From: Vitrella brassicaformis CCMP3155
Taxonomy: Eukaryota; Protista; Chromerida
Direction of reading: 5' to 3'
NCBI GenBank assembly: GCA_001179505.1
Contig: CDMY01000853.1
Location: forward strand, 1 to 15,281
DNA length: 15,281 nucleotides
Shown here: piece after piece, positions 1 through 12,900 of the stretch
Numbering within the stretch: the stretch's first letter is position 1
Layout: each line of letters starts with the position of its first letter
Notes under the pieces: model-generated
Database searches by the model: none
Told to the model about the DNA's origin: nothing
The model's input: the letters and a program-made list of their open reading frames with translations, nothing else
Translations under genes and position numbers: made by a program

Positions 1-311
1 AACTTTGACTGATTGGCCAGTCCATCGGTCTTATTAAAGTAAAAGCACTCTTACTCTGGGACTTACCGCGCAGCAGATCCTCTATTCAGCTAACTACAGG
101 AAAGGTCCTCACCGGCCTTTTCGCACACTGCTATCGTATCGTCTCGTCTCCATCTTCATGTACACAAGCTGTCGGCCCGCTTTCACTCCCCTGCCATTGT
201 CACTGCCCGCAGACCGACCCGAACACTCACACATCTACACGTCCCTCTCGGGTTCAGACGATCCGCGCATCGCATCCGAGAAACAATCGCTCAGATGGAG
301 CCGACCCGGCC

Positions 312-319
312 TAGGGTTT
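312..319. promoter_or_regulatory. Single telo-box-like motif (TAGGGTTT / AAACCCTA)
   Basis: Exact 8-mer read from the sequence. A single copy can easily occur by chance. Confidence 0.2.
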
Positions 320-422
320 GAACTTGACATCAGCAGCAGCAAGGTAAGGGCCCAAAAAGCCGACCTCTGCGCCCGGGCCTCAATCAGATGAGCAGCATCC
401 ATCGGTCGTCAGTCATTCATTG

Positions 423-2427
423 TCAGATGAAGAGCTGGGCGTGGGGGTCCCGCGCCTCGAAGAATCGCGTGACGACTCGCTTGACCAAGTCTCGGTGGTC
501 GCAGATGTTCGGGTCAACATTGCGGCCAGTCACGTCGGACTGCACACCTGAATGAATGGACGACAGCAACATAACAACACAACACAACACAACAAATGTA
601 TGGCATTTCTGTGTGAGGGTGTGAGTAAAGTGAGGGTACCGATGATGTAGAGTTTCTTGGCGATGAACATGGGCGACAGGTGCAGCAGGTTCCAGAACTG
701 GTCCCCGTTCTTCTTGACGTTCAGAATCTTCACAACCAAGTCGTCACACATTTGCACCTGAAGGCAGAAAACAAACGGCACGCAGAAAGAACGAACGGAT
801 GCAGGCAGGCACGTGACGAGACGAGACGAGCAGCCTAGCCTCTCTCTGCGCTGCGTGTGTGACATATTGACATACCGAAGTGGCGCTGGTAAGGTTTTGG
901 ATCCACCGTGCAATCTTGGCCACCTCCTCCCTGTCGGTCTCTTCGCACTGCATGAACCGGCAGTTTATGCCGCACACCTCCCACGGGCTGTACCCAGTCA
1001 AATCGCAGAAGCCTGATAGATACATAGATAGATGCACACGACGCACACACACGCGACAGCCACTCAGGAGACGAGACCACACGGAGAGGGTCTGTCTCTA
1101 TGGCACGCCACTGACCTTGCGACACCGAGACGATGGGGCAGTCGTTCTGCGAGGGGTCTGCGAGTGTGGTGGAGAAGGTCACAGAGTCCATGTCGATTTT
1201 GGAGAGCAGCTCGGCGTCGGCCGAGCACCGCGTCATGGATATCTTCATCTGCAGCTCGGACACCAGGCTTTCCAGCTTGGTGATCTGGGTCTTGAGCAGC
1301 TCATTCTCCTCTGAATGAACAAGACACACACACGACTCACGATGAATGGATGGAGGGCGGGTGTGGCTGTGTGAATGCGTGTTTTCATTCGCCCGCCCAT
1401 TTGACCGACTCACCTGTGAGTGAGAGGAGGTCATTGGAGAAGGTCTGGTTGTCGTGTGGCGGCTCCAAAAACTCGGACAGCATGCTCGGCGTGAACACAG
1501 TCGGGTCGAGACGAACCTTCTTGCTGCAGACAGACATCCACACAACACAAAGGACAGCCAAATGAGCAGACAGACAGACACCCATGGGTCACCACACCAC
1601 ACCCTCCTACTGACCGACCTGTTTCGTGTGACCTCTTCGTGCTTCCCGTCATCACTTGCCGCCGACCCATGCCCACAGTCCACCCACTCGTCCCCCCTCT
1701 CGCCACCGGCCCTCGCGGCCTCATCGTCCCCCGCCCCCTTGGCCACCTCACACGGCGACCTTTCCCTCTTGTTGCGCCCGTCATCGTCGCAACGCATCGA
1801 CTCGGCCAAACGCGATGACGGCGAGGGCGACATCCTCGCCTCCCTCCCGACACTCTCGCCCTGCTGCTGCTGCTGCTGCTGTTGCTGGGCGAGGGATGCC
1901 TGCGCCCGCACGTTCTGCATCAGCTGTATGAGAGCGAGAGCCTCCTGCGCGCCTCTCGCGCCCCGCGACGGATCGGAGGAGGCCGCCTCACTGCTCGATG
2001 CTGATGTGTCGGGCTGCCATGACCGAGAAGTCGGGCCGCTGGGTGCGGCACTCGGCTGTGGAGCCATCCAGGAGCCGGGTGGTGGTCGGTTTGACACGAA
2101 TGTGCTGTCGACGAAGCCGCCTCTCTGCTGCTGTGGGAAGGAGGGTCCATAGTGGTAGGTCGGCGGGGAGGCGGGCATGAAGGGCATGAGGTAAGGGTTC
2201 ATGCTGTCGAAGCCACTGGCCCTCCCGCCGCCCCTTCCGTCATACAAATGCGGATTGGTGCCGAATGGCTCTCCTCCGTCGCTGAAGGTCCTCCTTCCTC
2301 CCATCGTGTACGCCGCCTCAGTGTCAGGCTGGCATCGAGGCCTGGGTGACTCGCTCGGCGGCGCCTCTGCTGCCCTCTTCTGCTCGCCAGGGTGGGAATG
2401 GTCGACAGCTGCCGCAGGAGCTGACAT
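423..2427 (-). CDS. Leucine-zipper plus LOV (PAS-family, flavin-binding blue-light sensor) protein, about 497 aa, 6 exons, aureochrome-like architecture
   Basis: Exons (-): 2427-1619, 1523-1414, 1310-1116, 1012-876, 757-640, 547-423. All introns are GT-AG and phase-compatible, total 1494 nt, ending at TGA 425-423. The spliced C-terminus reads TTLADPSQNDCPIVSVSQGFCDLTGYSPWEVCGINCRFMQCEETDREEVAKI...VVKILNVKKNGDQFWNLLHLSPMF...YIIGVQSDVT, matching the LOV consensus (DP..D.PI, F..LTGY, GxNCRFLQ, N..K.G..FWN, GVQ.D). A heptad repeat lies directly upstream. The start ATG at 2427 is the most plausible one but is unproven. Confidence 0.9.
1861..1887 (-). repeat. CAG/CAA trinucleotide repeat encoding a 9-residue polyglutamine tract in exon 1 of the LOV gene
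   Basis: The plus strand reads (CTG)7 TTG CTG, which translates to Q9 on the minus strand. Confidence 0.9.
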
Positions 2428-2545
2428 CGATGTCCACAGCTTGACTAGTGTAACGAGATTCGTGAGAACTTCTTGTCTTCTGCGAGCCAGGCGGTACCCT
2501 GAACCCCAGAACCCTGTAGCGGTTTCCTGAGGGTGAGAGCCCGAT
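2428..2545. promoter_or_regulatory. Very short divergent intergenic region, putative bidirectional promoter
   Basis: Only 118 bp separate the ATG at 2427 (-) from the ATG at 2546 (+), or 163 bp if the phosphatase starts at 2591. Inferred from position only. Confidence 0.4.
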
Positions 2546-3861
2546 ATGTGGCGCTGCCGATCGTCGAAGAGGAGCATCCATGCTGAGGTGATGTCGGGAC
2601 TCAGATCTGAATCCCTGCATTTCATCTGTCGGCCTCACCAAAGCCCTCGAGCTTTCAGCACTCTGCTTGCATCGTCGAAGCCTGTGCCCCTGCACCACCG
2701 CAGCTTTCCTGTTTACCACCAACGAATATCCTCCAAGAGGAGCAGGAGTGGCGGTCAGCGCACTTCGAGCACATGGGCAGTTGAGGCGAGTTCGGCCGAC
2801 GCAGCTGACGCGGAGAAGTTGCTGGTGGTGTTTGATCTGGACGAAACCTTGGTGCACACGAGGGCGGGTGGGCCGCAGCAGAATGGCGGAAAGGGTGTCG
2901 ATTTTGAGCTTTCGATGGAAGCGGGGGATCGGTACTCGGTGTCGGTACGGCCAGGCGCTGAGGCCATCTTGCGGTGGTGCACAGAGAACGGCTTTGAGAC
3001 AGCTCTGTACACAGGTCCCTGAGGCACTCACTCATTCACATGCACTGCACTGCACTGCTGGGTTTGTTGAATGCACTCATCGCATCCATCTGTGTTTGTC
3101 GTGTGTGTGTGGGTGCGTGGGGTGGGTGTCTGATCGGTATATCAGCCGGTGTGGAAGGCTATGCGGAGCGTGTGATGAGGAAGCTTGACCCTCACCGCAG
3201 GTACTTGCCCAGGCGGCTGTACAGAGACTCGTGCAGAAGGGTGGTCATCGGGGGAGGGGGCCCATCAGAAGAAAACGCAAGTGTCTTTCTCAAGGTGAAG
3301 CAAGACAGCTGTACAAAGGCAAAGAAAGAATGGTATGGTGGCCATGTCATGTACTGCTGCTGACTGCCTGTCTCTCTCTCGGTGTGTGTGTAGGACCTTA
3401 GCCGCTTTCGCGGCTGCTTGAAGCGTGTGGTCTTGGTGGACAACTCGCCGCTCTCTTTCTTCATCAACCCAGACAACGGCATTCCAGTCGCAGGTAGGTA
3501 CCACGCAAGCCAAGCACATCGAGCCGCGACAGACACGTGACTGACTGGATGTCTGTCGCGTGACTGTGTGTGTTTGTGTGGGGGCATAGATTTCCTTGCT
3601 GACCACCACAATGACGCGGCCAAGCACTCGTCATACGTGGACGAGTTCGACAGTCTGCGGCAGCTGCTCCTGGACCTCAAGCCGCTCGCAGACGTCAGGT
3701 CAGTCAGCTGCTGACTGACAAGGGCAATGTGGGCAATCACACAGACAGACCATGGGGCCATGTGGATGGTGTGCAGGCAGGAGCTTCGTGAGAGGTTCAA
3801 TCTAATGGACAACCTGGTGACGAAAGTGGTGGTCGGGATGAGCATAGCCAGCCGGCTGTGA
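2546..3861 (+). CDS. NIF/FCP1-SCP (CTD small phosphatase-like) HAD-superfamily phosphatase, about 303 aa, 5 exons
   Basis: Exons: 2546-3014, 3146-3294, 3394-3493, 3590-3698, 3777-3861 (912 nt, GT-AG, TGA at 3859-3861). Motifs: LVVFDLDETLVH (DxDxT), RPG, LYTAG..YA..V...LDP, LYRDSC, KDL, VVLVDNSP.SF..NP.NGIPV, DVR..LR..F.L. Alternative start at ATG 2591. Confidence 0.92.
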
Positions 3862-8165: not shown

Positions 8166-8465
8166 NNNNNNNNNNNNNNNNNNNNNNNNNNNNNNNNNNN
8201 NNNNNNNNNNNNNNNNNNNNNNNNNNNNNNNNNNNNNNNNNNNNNNNNNNNNNNNNNNNNNNNNNNNNNNNNNNNNNNNNNNNNNNNNNNNNNNNNNNNN
8301 NNNNNNNNNNNNNNNNNNNNNNNNNNNNNNNNNNNNNNNNNNNNNNNNNNNNNNNNNNNNNNNNNNNNNNNNNNNNNNNNNNNNNNNNNNNNNNNNNNNN
8401 NNNNNNNNNNNNNNNNNNNNNNNNNNNNNNNNNNNNNNNNNNNNNNNNNNNNNNNNNNNNNNNNN
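8166..8465. other. Assembly gap (300 N)
   Basis: Run of N. Confidence 0.99.
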
Positions 8466-9910: not shown

Positions 9911-12900
9911 TCATTCAGTCATGGCTGTGCGTCCGTCCAGGTCGATGACGTCCTCCCCCTCGTCGACCATGGCGTCAAAATCGGCGCTCTCCGCCNNNNN
10001 NNNNNNNNNNNNNNNNNNNNNNNNNNNNNNNNNNNNNNNNNNNNNNNNNNNNNNNNNNNNNNNNNNNNNNNNNNNNNNNNNNNNNNNNNNNNNNNNNNNN
10101 NNNNNNNNNNNNNNNNNNNNNNNNNNNNNNNNNNNNNNNNNNNNNNNNNNNNNNNNNNNNNNNNNNNNNNNNNNNNNNNNNNNNNNNNNNNNNNNNNNNN
10201 NNNNNNNNNNNNNNNNNNNNNNNNNNNNNNNNNNNNNNNNNNNNNNNNNNNNNNNNNNNNNNNNNNNNNNNNNNNNNNNNNNNNNNNNNNNNNNNTATTC
10301 ATTCGTCCGTCCGTCTGGTGGTCGTCTTTCTCACCGCAGCAGTAGGTTGGTCGTTGTCTTGTGTGTGTTGATCGTGCGATGGGGGGGCTGCAGTGGGGTC
10401 GAAATCGGCCTGTCTGCCGCCCTCATCTGGTGCACACCAGACAGACGCGCCACACACATCAATCCATCTCCACGTGTCTGCCGAAAGTTTGTGTCAGTAA
10501 TATTGCTCACCCACCTGTGGGCTGGTCATCCCGCGTGATGATCTGTCCATCGTCTGAGGGCTCGAACTCCTCGTCGTCATACTCACCGTCGGCCTCGATC
10601 TCCTCCTCTATCTCATCACTCCACACACACACACACACACACACATGGCCTCACTCATACACAATGCCCTACCCCTCCCCGCTCGCTCACTCTAGCGACG
10701 ACGCGCGAGCAGCCGCTGCCCCAGTGACCGTCGCAAACGGCCCCCCCGCCGTCTTGCCGCCCACTGGCCCGTCCAGGTTCAGGTCTTGTGTCGCCTTCTT
10801 GTCATGTGACGAGGTGGTCAGAGAGGGGGGCCATGCCCGCCGGTGGTAGCCGAATATCGACGTGGGCTTGGACGCACCCTGCACACCACACCACAGCACA
10901 GCACACGGGGGGACAAGACAAAGGGTATGGATAAGGGAGATGGATGGAGAGCTGCACTGCATCAATCATTGTTGCCCTGCTTTGCTTATATGTACTGCTC
11001 ACATGAGTGGCGTCCTGCTCCCGTGTGTTGGTGTTGATGGTGGCGGTGGTGGTGCTGCCGACGGTATCGCTGAGCCCCTCACTGGCACGAAAGCCATCCG
11101 CCGACATCTCATCAGCACCGATGGACGCATCACCATCTGACTCACACCGTTGGAGCGAAATACACAAGTGAGGCTTCAATTCATGTGTTGTGTGTCAATT
11201 GTTGCTGCATGGTCATGTCATGGTCCTACTTACCGTGGGAAGCCTTATGGTCCGTGCCCCCCTCCTGGCCGCCAGTTTCGTCATCCTCGTCGTCTAGGCC
11301 TGCGGATGGCCCGGCGGCATCCTCAGCCTGCGTGAGGCTCTGAGTCTTCTTCATGTCCAAGGGCGGCAAACGAGTGTGACGCGGGTCGGGGAGATCTGAT
11401 ACACACACACACACACAGGCGTCAATCGAGATGGCTGCATGGCCATGTGTGCGGCTCGTTGCGTACCATGGACATCTCTGGCTGCCATCGATCCCACTAC
11501 AGTGCTCTCCTCAATGCCCTGTCCGCCCCCAGCCGCAGCCGCCCGAGCGATCTCGCGCATCTTGCCGGCGATGGTGTCGTCAAACGACGCACTCAGCTCC
11601 AGGCTATCGCCCACAGCATACGCGCCCGCCAGCCCGCTCAGCCGTATGTCCCTCTCCGGCAGCGGCTTCGATGGCGGCACTGGTGAGAGGATGGGCCGGT
11701 TGTCGTAGGAGTGCTGCAGTGGGGAGGGCAGCTGCGAGTTGGTCATGGGCGTCTGGCCCGGGGGGGTCACCTCAAAATGGATATCAGAATCCTGACCGAC
11801 CAGCACGGACACAGCAGATGTCTGTCCGTCCGTCTGTCTGTCCGTCTGTCTGCCTGTCAAACACACCCATTCGCCCACCTGTCCAGCGTCCTCAGATCGG
11901 TGATTCAGGCCGTTGCGCATGTCGACCCTGGCCCCCTCACCCGCCGCCCCCGCGAGCAGCTCGTTGAGTCCGTCGTCCACCGCATTCCGCCGGTCGAGTG
12001 TGTAGTTGACGATGTCCTGCAGCAGGGGGTTGTCTGTGGAGGCNNNNNNNNNNNNNNNNNNNNNNNNNNNNNNNNNNNNNNNNNNNNNNNNNNNNNNNNN
12101 NNNNNNNNNNNNNNNNNNNNNNNNNNNNNNNNNNNNNNNNNNNNNNNNNNNNNNNNNNNNNNNNNNNNNNNNNNNNNNNNNNNNNNNNNNNNNNNNNNNN
12201 NNNNNNNNNNNNNNNNNNNNNNNNNNNNNNNNNNNNNNNNNNNNNNNNNNNNNNNNNNNNNNNNNNNNNNNNNNNNNNNNNNNNNNNNNNNNNNNNNNNN
12301 NNNNNNNNNNNNNNNNNNNNNNNNNNNNNNNNNNNNNNNNNNNGATGGATGGAGAGCTGCACTGCATCAATCATTGTTGCCCTGCTTTGCTTATATGTAC
12401 TGCTCACATGAGTGGCGTCCTGCTCCCGTGTGTTGGTGTTGATGGTGGCGGTGGTGGTGCTGCCGACGGTATCGCTGAGCCCCTCACTGGCACGAAAGCC
12501 ATCCGCCGACATCTCATCAGCACCGATGGACGCATCACCATCTGACTCACACCGTTGGAGCGAAATACACAAGTGAGGCTTCAATTCATGTGTTGTGTGT
12601 CAATTGTTGCTGCATGGTCATGTCATGGTCCTACTTACCGTGGGAAGCCTTATGGTCCGTGCCCCCCTCCTGGCCGCCAGTTTCGTCATCCTCGTCGTCT
12701 AGGCCTGCGGATGGCCCGGCGGCATCCTCAGCCTGCGTGAGGCTCTGAGTCTTCTTCATGTCCAAGGGCGGCAAACGAGTGTGACGCGGGTCGGGGAGAT
12801 CTGATACACACACACACACACAGGCGTCAATCGAGATGGCTGCATGGCCATGTGTGCGGCTCGTTGCGTACCATGGACATCTCTGGCTGCCATCGATCCC

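What the first reader, a model, noticed from the sequence alone, without database searches (positions are those of the whole stretch)
423..1523. Leucine-zipper-LOV photoreceptor with aureochrome domain order but no DNA-binding basic region
Seen after splicing: F-SNDLLS-L-TEENEL-L-KTQITK-L-ESLVSE-L-QMKISM, i.e. five heptads with d = F,L,L,L,L and a = L,N,I,V,I, including the a-position Asn typical of parallel dimeric bZIP zippers. It is followed after a short linker by a LOV domain that keeps the adduct Cys (GINCRFMQ, 971-948), both flavin-binding Asn and the signalling Gln (GVQ), then a J-alpha-like helix (DHRDLVKRVVTRFFEAR). Where a bZIP N-x7-R basic helix should be, the sequence is Pro/acidic (DPTVFTPSMLSEFLEPPHD), and the neighbouring introns hold no hidden basic exon. 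An NLS-like KKVR and a roughly 270-aa P/S/G/Q-rich disordered region with polyQ lie upstream. Established: aureochromes (bZIP-LOV) are described from photosynthetic stramenopiles, and zipper proteins without a basic region can act as dominant-negative or partner subunits. Inference: a light-gated dimerisation module that sequesters bZIP factors or supplies them with an activation domain. If the host is a chromerid alveolate, this could be an undescribed photoreceptor class.
Basis: partly seen in the sequence, partly recalled or inferred. Interest (0 to 1): 0.82.

Follow-up and report, generated by a model that had tools for sequence, protein, structure and literature searches.

The report
Leucine-zipper LOV blue-light sensor, Vitrella
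This is a real, expressed gene of the alga Vitrella brassicaformis for a probable blue-light sensor (LOV domain) joined to a dimer-forming leucine zipper with no DNA-binding part. It belongs to an uncharacterised six-gene family that I found only in this species.

Summary
The gene lies on the minus strand in six exons with five GT-AG introns. Transcript contigs from three public runs skip exactly those introns.

The product is the 563-aa NCBI 'unnamed protein product' of Vitrella brassicaformis CCMP3155. It has four parts:
- a roughly 270-aa low-complexity N-terminus with a run of nine Gln;
- a c-Myc-like KKVRLD motif;
- a five-heptad leucine zipper with Asn at one a position;
- a C-terminal LOV domain.

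The LOV domain keeps the adduct Cys, both flavin Asn and the signalling Gln. One phosphate-contacting Arg is Ala. There is no basic region in the protein, in the introns or in the transcripts, and Pfam finds no bZIP.

An exhaustive search of 1.84 billion representative proteins found full-length-like relatives only in Vitrella, five paralogues:
- two more zipper-LOV proteins;
- one zipper-like member whose LOV has lost the Cys;
- two without a zipper.

In LOV trees the Vitrella group and a dinoflagellate LOV group together separate from the other sampled LOVs. Solved aureochrome LOVs score below YtvA and phototropin LOVs. It therefore shares the aureochrome domain order but is not shown to be an aureochrome.

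The mechanism is inferred: light-modulated zipper and LOV dimerisation of a nuclear co-regulator. The scan's first readers had already flagged zipper-LOV genes elsewhere in this genome. Rating: new variant of a known kind, moderate to high interest.

The parts
423..2625 (-). Whole annotated coding range of the zipper-LOV gene (six exons; product P0001, 563 aa). Transcript contigs extend to about position 100, giving a 3' UTR of 422-100.
   Evidence: Splice model; identity with P0001; spliced contigs.
1619..2427 (-). Exon 1 from the likely start Met67. It encodes a low-complexity N-terminal region in which S, A, G, P and Q make up 53% of residues. It includes the nine-Gln run (1887-1861) and the basic patch GRNKRERS (1779-1756).
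   Evidence: Composition; coordinates; transcript contigs of this gene end at 2435-2464; no Pfam hit.
1505..1522 (-). KKVRLD, a c-Myc-type NLS-like motif. Paralogue P0164 has RKRVRL at the equivalent place.
   Evidence: Alignments. Nuclear targeting is inferred, not tested.
1234..1441 (-). Leucine zipper, residues 364-398, five heptads, split by intron 2 (1413-1311). Asn375 sits at an a position.
   Evidence: 0 of 2000 shuffles reach the heptad score; paralogues P0017 and P0023 share the register and the Asn. AF2 helix 361-410 with pLDDT 93-97.
528..1173 (-). LOV core, residues 419-529, spread over exons 3 to 6. It includes GINCRFMQ (971-948), the adduct Cys455 (962-960), a 9-residue family-specific insert after F-alpha, and Gln525 (542-540).
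   Evidence: PAS_9 E=5e-12; YtvA E=2e-23; Foldseek CrPhot LOV1 target-normalised TM 0.89 at 1.8 A; conserved-column check.
426..503 (-). J-alpha-like helix (residues 538-553) and a conserved hydrophobic C-terminal tail: ...QLFI here, ...ELCI or ...SLCI in the paralogues.
   Evidence: AF2 helix 203-218 of the model; alignments.
1524..1618 (-). Intron 1 (95 nt, GT..AG). No basic exon in any frame.
1311..1413 (-). Intron 2 (103 nt, GT..AG), inside the zipper. No usable basic exon in any frame.

Best explanation
The gene encodes a LOV-type blue-light sensor. Its only other folded element is a parallel-dimer-type leucine zipper directly N-terminal of the LOV domain. Upstream lie an NLS-like motif and a long disordered Gln/Pro/Ser-rich region.

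Shown here:
- the gene is transcribed and spliced as modelled;
- the LOV domain keeps the residues needed for flavin binding and Cys-adduct formation;
- the zipper is far beyond chance and keeps its register in two paralogues, Asn at the a position included;
- there is no basic DNA-binding region;
- the family has six genes and full-length-like relatives were found only in Vitrella;
- its LOV domains stay with dinoflagellate LOVs in the trees.

Inferred mechanism:
- The zipper holds two chains together, either as homodimers or as heterodimers with the paralogues P0017, P0023 and the Cys-less P0193.
- Blue light forms the flavin-Cys455 adduct.
- The signal passes through Gln525 to the beta-sheet, the short linker helix and the J-alpha helix.
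- This changes LOV-LOV contacts at the foot of the zipper, as in aureochrome 1a, where light-driven LOV dimerisation acts on the N-terminal module (PMC4721966).
- The output is a change in dimer stability or geometry, and so in what the N-terminal disordered region and the pre-zipper segment can bind in the nucleus.
- On this reading it is a light-controlled co-regulator rather than a DNA-binding factor.
For: - Splicing and expression.
- Identity and organism.
- LOV.
- Zipper: 0/2000, 9/2000 and 1/2000 shuffles for the three zipper paralogues; 50-residue helix, pLDDT 93-97.
- No basic region.
- Family restricted to Vitrella among 1.84e9 representatives. The two word searches agree.
- LOV tree: Vitrella clade 99/90; Vitrella plus dinoflagellate group against the 46 other sampled LOVs 100/96.
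- Dinoflagellate identity of that group: source names; spliced-leader remnants.
- NLS-like motifs recur in the paralogues.
- My count of g-to-e' pairs on the registers finds no repulsive pair in the P0001 homodimer and compatible heterodimers.
Against: - No biochemical data exist. Flavin binding, the photocycle, dimerisation and nuclear location are all untested.
- Ala472 replaces the F-alpha Arg, which is Arg in 59 of 75 aligned LOVs. This could weaken or change cofactor binding.
- The structure model is a monomer, so it says nothing about dimers.
- Two paralogues have no zipper, so the zipper is not essential to the family.
- No orthologue outside one species means no comparative support for function.
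Confidence: 0.6

Rival explanations
1. A light-gated dominant-negative or activation-domain donor for true bZIP factors. The basic-region-less zipper would pair with DNA-binding bZIP proteins of Vitrella and either pull them off DNA or bring them the disordered N-terminus.
For: - The zipper has bZIP-like core chemistry: Leu at d, beta-branched residues at a, one Asn at a.
- P0017 gives a weak bZIP_1 hit to the zipper half only, E=0.056.
- Earlier scan notes report bZIP genes in this genome (not checked by me).
Against: - There is no significant similarity to any bZIP zipper.
- The family itself offers four mutually compatible zippers in the same register with the same Asn. These are simpler partners.
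- Nothing links it to a particular bZIP.
Confidence: 0.15
2. A degenerate aureochrome: a stramenopile-type bZIP-LOV gene, for example acquired with the plastid ancestor, that lost its basic region.
For: - It has the same unusual order as aureochromes: zipper N-terminal, LOV with flanking helices C-terminal.
- No aureochrome sequences could be placed in my trees, so this is not excluded phylogenetically.
Against: - The family profile scores aureochrome LOVs (85-91 bits) below YtvA (109) and phototropin LOVs (98-105).
- The LOVs that stay with the Vitrella group in the trees are dinoflagellate.
- None of the six paralogues retains a basic region.
- The protein-atlas neighbours carry PAS families only, no bZIP.
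Confidence: 0.1
3. A light-blind PAS scaffold. The LOV-like domain would no longer bind flavin and the protein would be a constitutive coiled-coil dimer.
For: - Ala472 replaces the phosphate-binding Arg, and there are family-specific changes (Gly to Cys460, Ala to Trp474).
- Paralogue P0193 has clearly lost the Cys and the Gln, so degeneration does occur in this family.
Against: - All seven core photochemical and flavin-contacting residues checked are intact in P0001 and in four of its five paralogues.
- The Arg position varies within the family (A, K, H, K, R) while the rest of the pocket is conserved.
Confidence: 0.1

Closest known systems
Aureochromes (bZIP-LOV transcription factors of stramenopile algae, e.g. 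PtAUREO1a, VfAUREO1)
   Same: - Inverted order: a zipper N-terminal and a LOV domain with flanking helices C-terminal.
- A disordered N-terminus.
- Likely nuclear.
- The aureochrome mechanism, light-induced LOV dimerisation acting on the N-terminal zipper module (PMC4721966), is the best working model.
   Different: - No basic region and no bZIP Pfam hit.
- The LOV domain is not closer to aureochrome LOVs than to bacterial or plant ones.
- The host is an alveolate, whereas aureochromes are reported only from stramenopiles (PMC10967249, PMC13737086).
- There is a 9-residue insert after F-alpha, and the LOV motif ends QC instead of QG.
YtvA and other short LOV proteins that dimerise through helical extensions (best sequence and fold matches)
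   Same: - Best PDB matches: E=2e-23, profile 109 bits, Foldseek rank 1-7.
- A LOV core whose signal is carried by coiled-coil-type helices in a dimer.
   Different: - In YtvA the signalling coiled coil is C-terminal (J-alpha) and leads to a STAS domain.
- Here the long coiled coil is N-terminal and there is no folded effector.
Dinoflagellate LOV proteins (e.g. from Pelagodinium beii, Gymnodinium smaydae, Durusdinium trenchii; uncharacterised)
   Same: They stay with the Vitrella LOV clade when the other sampled LOVs split off: FastTree 96, IQ-TREE 100/96 for that split.
   Different: - None has a zipper before the LOV domain.
- Architectures differ: 1300-1800 aa with two or three LOVs, LOV plus He_PIG, Neuralized plus LOV.
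Zipper proteins without a basic region (TSC-22 family; engineered A-ZIPs)
   Same: A leucine zipper with no DNA-binding helix. There is a weak TSC22 profile match over the zipper, E=0.007-0.04.
   Different: The match is below the Pfam cut-off (about 15-17 bits against 30) and there is no TSC box. The resemblance is coiled-coil composition only.

Membership tests
LOV domain (flavin-binding PAS subclass) | PAS fold | tested here: met
   PAS_9 E=5e-12. AF2 model with pLDDT 91-98 over the core. Foldseek to CrPhot LOV1: target-normalised TM 0.89, rmsd 1.8 A.
LOV domain (flavin-binding PAS subclass) | GXNCRFLQ motif with the adduct-forming Cys | tested here: met
   GINCRFMQ, Cys455, at 971-948.
LOV domain (flavin-binding PAS subclass) | Flavin-contacting Asn, Asn and Gln on the beta-sheet, and Arg and Gln on E-alpha | tested here: met
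   N496, N506, Q525, R456 and Q459 sit in columns that are 91-100% conserved across 75 LOVs.
LOV domain (flavin-binding PAS subclass) | Second phosphate-binding Arg on F-alpha | tested here: not met
   Ala472, where 59 of 75 aligned LOVs have Arg. The paralogues have K, H, K and R.
LOV domain (flavin-binding PAS subclass) | Flavin binding and a reversible 450-to-390 nm photocycle | not testable with these tools
   Needs recombinant protein and spectroscopy.
Aureochrome | bZIP basic region (N-x7-R/K) directly before the zipper | tested here: not met
   The protein has no N-x7-R/K. The pre-zipper segment 336-366 has 3 K/R, 4 D/E and 4 Pro. No intron frame holds a basic exon. No bZIP family appears at E<=10. 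The transcripts carry no extra exon.
Aureochrome | Leucine zipper N-terminal of a C-terminal LOV domain with flanking helices | tested here: met
Aureochrome | LOV domain belongs to the aureochrome clade | tested here: inconclusive
   Aureochrome LOVs score lower than YtvA and phototropin LOVs, and dinoflagellate LOVs stay with the Vitrella group. No aureochrome sequence could be fetched for the tree.
Aureochrome | Light-enhanced binding to TGACGT-type DNA | not testable with these tools
   Needs EMSA. A negative result is expected.
bZIP (PF00170 / PF07716) | Profile match covering the basic region and the zipper | tested here: not met
   None for P0001, P0023 or P0193. P0017 gives only E=0.056 to profile positions 35-62 of 64, the zipper half.
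TSC-22 family | TSC box plus zipper, above the Pfam gathering score | tested here: not met
   14.5-16.9 bits against a cut-off of 30, over the zipper only.

The most novel reading that the evidence does not exclude
Vitrella has a private set of light-switchable leucine-zipper subunits: three photoactive zipper-LOV proteins, one light-blind zipper member, and two zipper-less LOVs. These would form combinatorial nuclear dimers in which blue light sets partner choice or dimer geometry and so controls transcription without any DNA-binding domain of their own. That would be a natural light-controlled zipper dimeriser. It would also be a LOV signalling route in the closest photosynthetic relatives of apicomplexan parasites, and one not reported from Chromera.
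Probability: 0.3. Interest if true: 0.75.

Novelty: new variant of a known kind. Interest (0 to 1): 0.6.

Why it matters
LOV receptors are classified by what the LOV domain controls. Here it appears to control only a dimerisation helix and a disordered tail. That is the aureochrome layout stripped of DNA binding, in a different eukaryotic supergroup.

If it is photoactive, three things follow:
- It gives chromerid algae a blue-light pathway beyond cryptochromes. A 2023 survey of Chromera velia found only cryptochromes among known blue-light receptor types, although blue light drives its zoospore formation (PMC10739334).
- It would show that the zipper-before-LOV layout arose, or was kept, outside stramenopiles.
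- It offers a compact natural zipper-LOV pair, with ready-made paralogous partners, as a candidate optogenetic dimeriser.

The family is currently annotated only as 'PAS domain-containing protein'.

Tried and rejected
- Pfam on single exons gave only weak, collinear PAS_9 pieces. It became useful only after the annotated protein was retrieved.
- Three word searches found no relative outside Vitrella beyond generic bacterial LOV-phosphatase and LOV-kinase proteins, and no aureochrome. I therefore could not put aureochromes in the tree.
- The zipper alone against the PDB gave only generic coiled coils at E>=0.58. This neither supports nor excludes bZIP ancestry.
- Intron positions were compared among five family genes to look for shared ancestry. 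Only one position is shared, between P0017 and P0023. This fits old duplicates but tells little more.
- I looked for a zipper before the LOV domains of all hits. Apart from the Vitrella genes, the only hit was a Glaucocystis bHLH-LOV-LOV protein, which has a different architecture.
- Rfam on window 1-3200 found nothing.
- An exact look-up of P0160 found no contig. The cluster look-up then showed it is a truncated transcript form of Vitrella CEM40024.1.

Full report
**1. What is in the sequence**

Read on the minus strand, window 2625-423 holds six exons: 2625-1619, 1523-1414, 1310-1116, 1012-876, 757-640 and 547-423. They are joined by five GT..AG introns of 95, 103, 103, 118 and 92 nt. The joined reading frame is open for 563 codons.

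A word search using the in-frame exon 3 returned a database protein identical to this model. It is P0001, 563 aa, NCBI 'unnamed protein product [Vitrella brassicaformis CCMP3155]', UniRef 'PAS domain-containing protein'.

**2. Expression and splicing**

Assembled contigs of three public runs from two studies (X1 and X2 of P1, X8 of P4) skip exactly 546-637, 756-873, 1012-1114, 1311-1413 and 1524-1618. A contig of run X3 is collinear with the genome across 100-1850.

- The spliced form exists as RNA, and no contig carries an extra exon in introns 1 or 2.
- The contigs run from about position 100 (3' UTR) to 1850, break at the CAG repeat, and resume from 1896 to 2435 or 2464.
- Nothing covers 2465-2521 in X1. 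Beyond that, the contigs belong to a divergent plus-strand gene.
- The annotated Met1 at 2625 therefore lies outside every transcript contig of this gene.
- The first AUG inside them is Met67 (2427-2425), so the protein is more likely 497 aa.
- Contigs cannot prove an RNA end, so this remains a suggestion.

**3. The LOV domain**

- Pfam gives PAS_9 at residues 428-529, E=5e-12.
- Against solved structures the best sequence matches are YtvA (E=2e-23), phototropin LOV1 and LOV2 (about 1e-18) and, further down, aureochrome LOV (3e-15).
- An AlphaFold2 model of residues 336-563, built on 75 aligned LOV sequences, has mean pLDDT 85.7 and 91-98 over the core.
- Foldseek matches the model to YtvA, to Chlamydomonas phototropin LOV1 (target-normalised TM 0.89, rmsd 1.8 A) and to aureochrome 1a LOV at rank 16.
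- In columns that are 91-100% conserved over the 75 LOVs, the protein keeps N454, C455, R456, Q459, N496, N506 and Q525.
- Three deviations stand out. Ala472 sits where 59 of 75 LOVs have the F-alpha Arg. Cys460 replaces the usual Gly after the motif. A 9-residue insert follows F-alpha.
- From established LOV photochemistry I infer that this domain can bind a flavin and form the Cys adduct. That is not shown.

**4. The zipper**

- A simple heptad score for this stretch was reached by none of 2000 shuffles of residues 336-563.
- The AF2 model makes one uninterrupted helix from 361 to 410, with pLDDT 93-97 in its middle. A very short linker leads into the first LOV strand.
- Leu at d, beta-branched residues at a and a single buried Asn are the textbook signature of a parallel two-stranded zipper. 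That is established coiled-coil knowledge, not tested here.
- My count of g-to-e' pairs on the register finds one attractive pair and no repulsive pair for a homodimer.

**5. No DNA-binding region**

- The protein has no N-x7-R/K anywhere.
- The 31 residues before the zipper hold 3 K/R, 4 D/E and 4 Pro.
- No frame of any intron encodes a basic helix.
- Pfam reports no bZIP family, even at E<=10.
- The zipper alone finds only generic coiled coils in the PDB, at E>=0.58. A TSC22 match is far below its cut-off.
- The only basic clusters are GRNKRERS, about 80 residues upstream, and KKVRLD, which resembles the c-Myc nuclear localisation signal (my knowledge).

**6. Relatives**

An exhaustive HMMER search of 1.84 billion representative proteins found 9643 LOV-type hits. 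Only a handful align from the zipper or the linker to the C-terminus. All of these are Vitrella proteins:

| Protein | Accession | Length | Features |
|---|---|---|---|
| P0017 | CEM03295.1 | 284 aa | 51% identity; zipper, LOV and tail |
| P0023 | CEM11163.1 | 327 aa | zipper, LOV and tail |
| P0193 | CEM40024.1 | 415 aa | shorter coil; LOV-like domain with NTR for NCR and Cys for the signalling Gln, so probably light-blind |
| P0164 | CEM37188.1 | 307 aa | LOV, no zipper |
| P0026 | CEM00112.1 | 176 aa | LOV, no zipper |

- The three full zippers share one register and the same Asn at the a position. Their scores are reached by 0, 9 and 1 of 2000 shuffles.
- The family also shares the F-alpha insert, the QC ending of the LOV motif and, except in P0164 and P0026 (which extend further), a hydrophobic C-terminal tail (...QLFI...ELCI...SLCI). 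NLS-like K/R clusters recur.
- None has a bZIP hit. P0017 gives E=0.056 to the zipper half of the profile only.
- Intron positions are almost all different between the paralogues and identities are 37-51%. The duplications are therefore old.

**7. Where the LOV domain comes from**

- In a FastTree of 284 LOV domains the five photoactive-type Vitrella domains form one group (97). They join a 52-row group (96).
- In a careful IQ-TREE of 103 rows, three splits are supported: the Vitrella group at 99/90, the 52-row group at 96/90, and both together against the 46 other sampled LOVs at 100/96.
- Members of the 52-row group are named as Gymnodinium smaydae, Pelagodinium beii and Durusdinium trenchii.
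- Three further transcripts of that group start with ...GCTCAAG, the end of the dinoflagellate spliced leader (the leader sequence is from my knowledge).
- If the root lies among the other LOVs, the Vitrella family is sister to dinoflagellate LOVs, which would fit an old alveolate lineage. The root is not inferred.
- The tree holds only the best 150 hits and no aureochrome.
- A profile of the family scores YtvA at 109 bits, oat LOV2 at 105, PtAUREO1a at 91 and VfAUREO1 at 85. This argues against a special tie to aureochromes.
- None of the dinoflagellate proteins has a zipper in front of the LOV domain.

**8. Literature**

- Full-text searches for Vitrella, chromerid, Chromera or alveolate together with LOV or aureochrome found no description of such a protein.
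- A 2023 study of Chromera velia reports success only for cryptochromes among known blue-light receptors. Aureochrome and VVD queries gave no candidate (PMC10739334).
- Recent surveys and reviews call aureochromes unique to stramenopiles and do not mention chromerid LOV proteins (PMC13737086, PMC12558739, PMC8017926).
- Within this scan, first readers had already flagged zipper-LOV genes on other pieces of the same genome. These are probably the paralogues above.

**9. How it most likely works**

Shown: the protein consists of a disordered N-terminus, an NLS-like motif, a zipper, a LOV domain, a J-alpha helix and a tail.

Inferred:
- The zipper makes parallel dimers, homotypic or with the paralogues.
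- Blue light forms the Cys455 adduct.
- The change spreads from Gln525 and the beta-sheet to the flanking helices. It alters LOV-LOV contacts at the base of the zipper, as worked out for aureochrome 1a (PMC4721966).
- This changes dimer stability or geometry and the availability of the N-terminal region for nuclear partners.
- The light-blind P0193 could act as a non-responsive partner.

It has no specific support.

**10. Verdict**

- This is a new architectural variant of a known receptor kind. It is lineage-specific, expressed and uncharacterised.
- It works like an aureochrome without the DNA-binding helix, but it fails the defining aureochrome feature and is not shown to be related to aureochromes.

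Noticed in passing
window 2427-2625 (minus strand): The annotated first 66 codons (Met1 at 2625) lie upstream of all transcript contigs of this gene, which end at 2435-2464. Met67 at 2427 is the first AUG inside them. The public model may be 66 residues too long.
   Followed up: partly
window 2546 to about 3540 (plus strand): A head-to-head neighbour encodes an NLI-interacting-factor-like (CTD-phosphatase-type) protein (Pfam NIF, E=2e-7). Transcript contigs confirm its intron 3012-3142. The two genes' contig ends are only about 58 nt apart (2464 against 2522), which suggests a short bidirectional promoter.
   Followed up: partly
window 1-127: Depth in the contig tables is 17,000-20,000 here against about 24-56 over the gene. 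All runs read C instead of G at position 70. This looks like a very high-copy repeat at the window edge. Rfam finds nothing.
   Followed up: partly
window 8166-8465, 9996-10295, 12044-12343: Three runs of exactly 300 N (assembly gaps). They explain the low-GC bins in the composition profile.
   Followed up: yes
P0193 (Vitrella CEM40024.1, another contig): A family member whose LOV-like domain reads NTR for NCR and has Cys for the signalling Gln. It keeps a short coil and the SLCI tail. It may be a light-blind partner, comparable to the non-flavin-binding aureochrome 2.
   Followed up: partly
P0138 (Glaucocystis sp. AML78262.1) and P0171 (metagenomic; its cluster includes a Telonema subtile fragment): Other transcription-factor-LOV fusions turned up among the hits: bHLH-LOV-LOV (HLH E=4e-13) and WRKY-LOV (WRKY E=4e-15).
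   Followed up: no
P0015 (4197 aa) and P0016 (3055 aa), metagenomic: Giant proteins with eight to ten LOV-like domains each were the top multi-domain hits of the exhaustive search.
   Followed up: no
L006, L009, L011 (JGI transcript contigs of P0134, P0002, P0182): Dinoflagellate transcripts, with spliced-leader remnants at the 5' end, that encode LOV plus He_PIG or LOV-only proteins. They are among the LOVs nearest to the Vitrella family and are uncharacterised.
   Followed up: partly
L002 1420-2920 (minus strand), next to the P0023 gene: The paralogue P0023 sits head-to-head with a CBM_20 gene. This is the same pairing that an earlier first-reader note (s1-221690) called a LOV and CBM20-F-box bidirectional promoter.
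   Followed up: no
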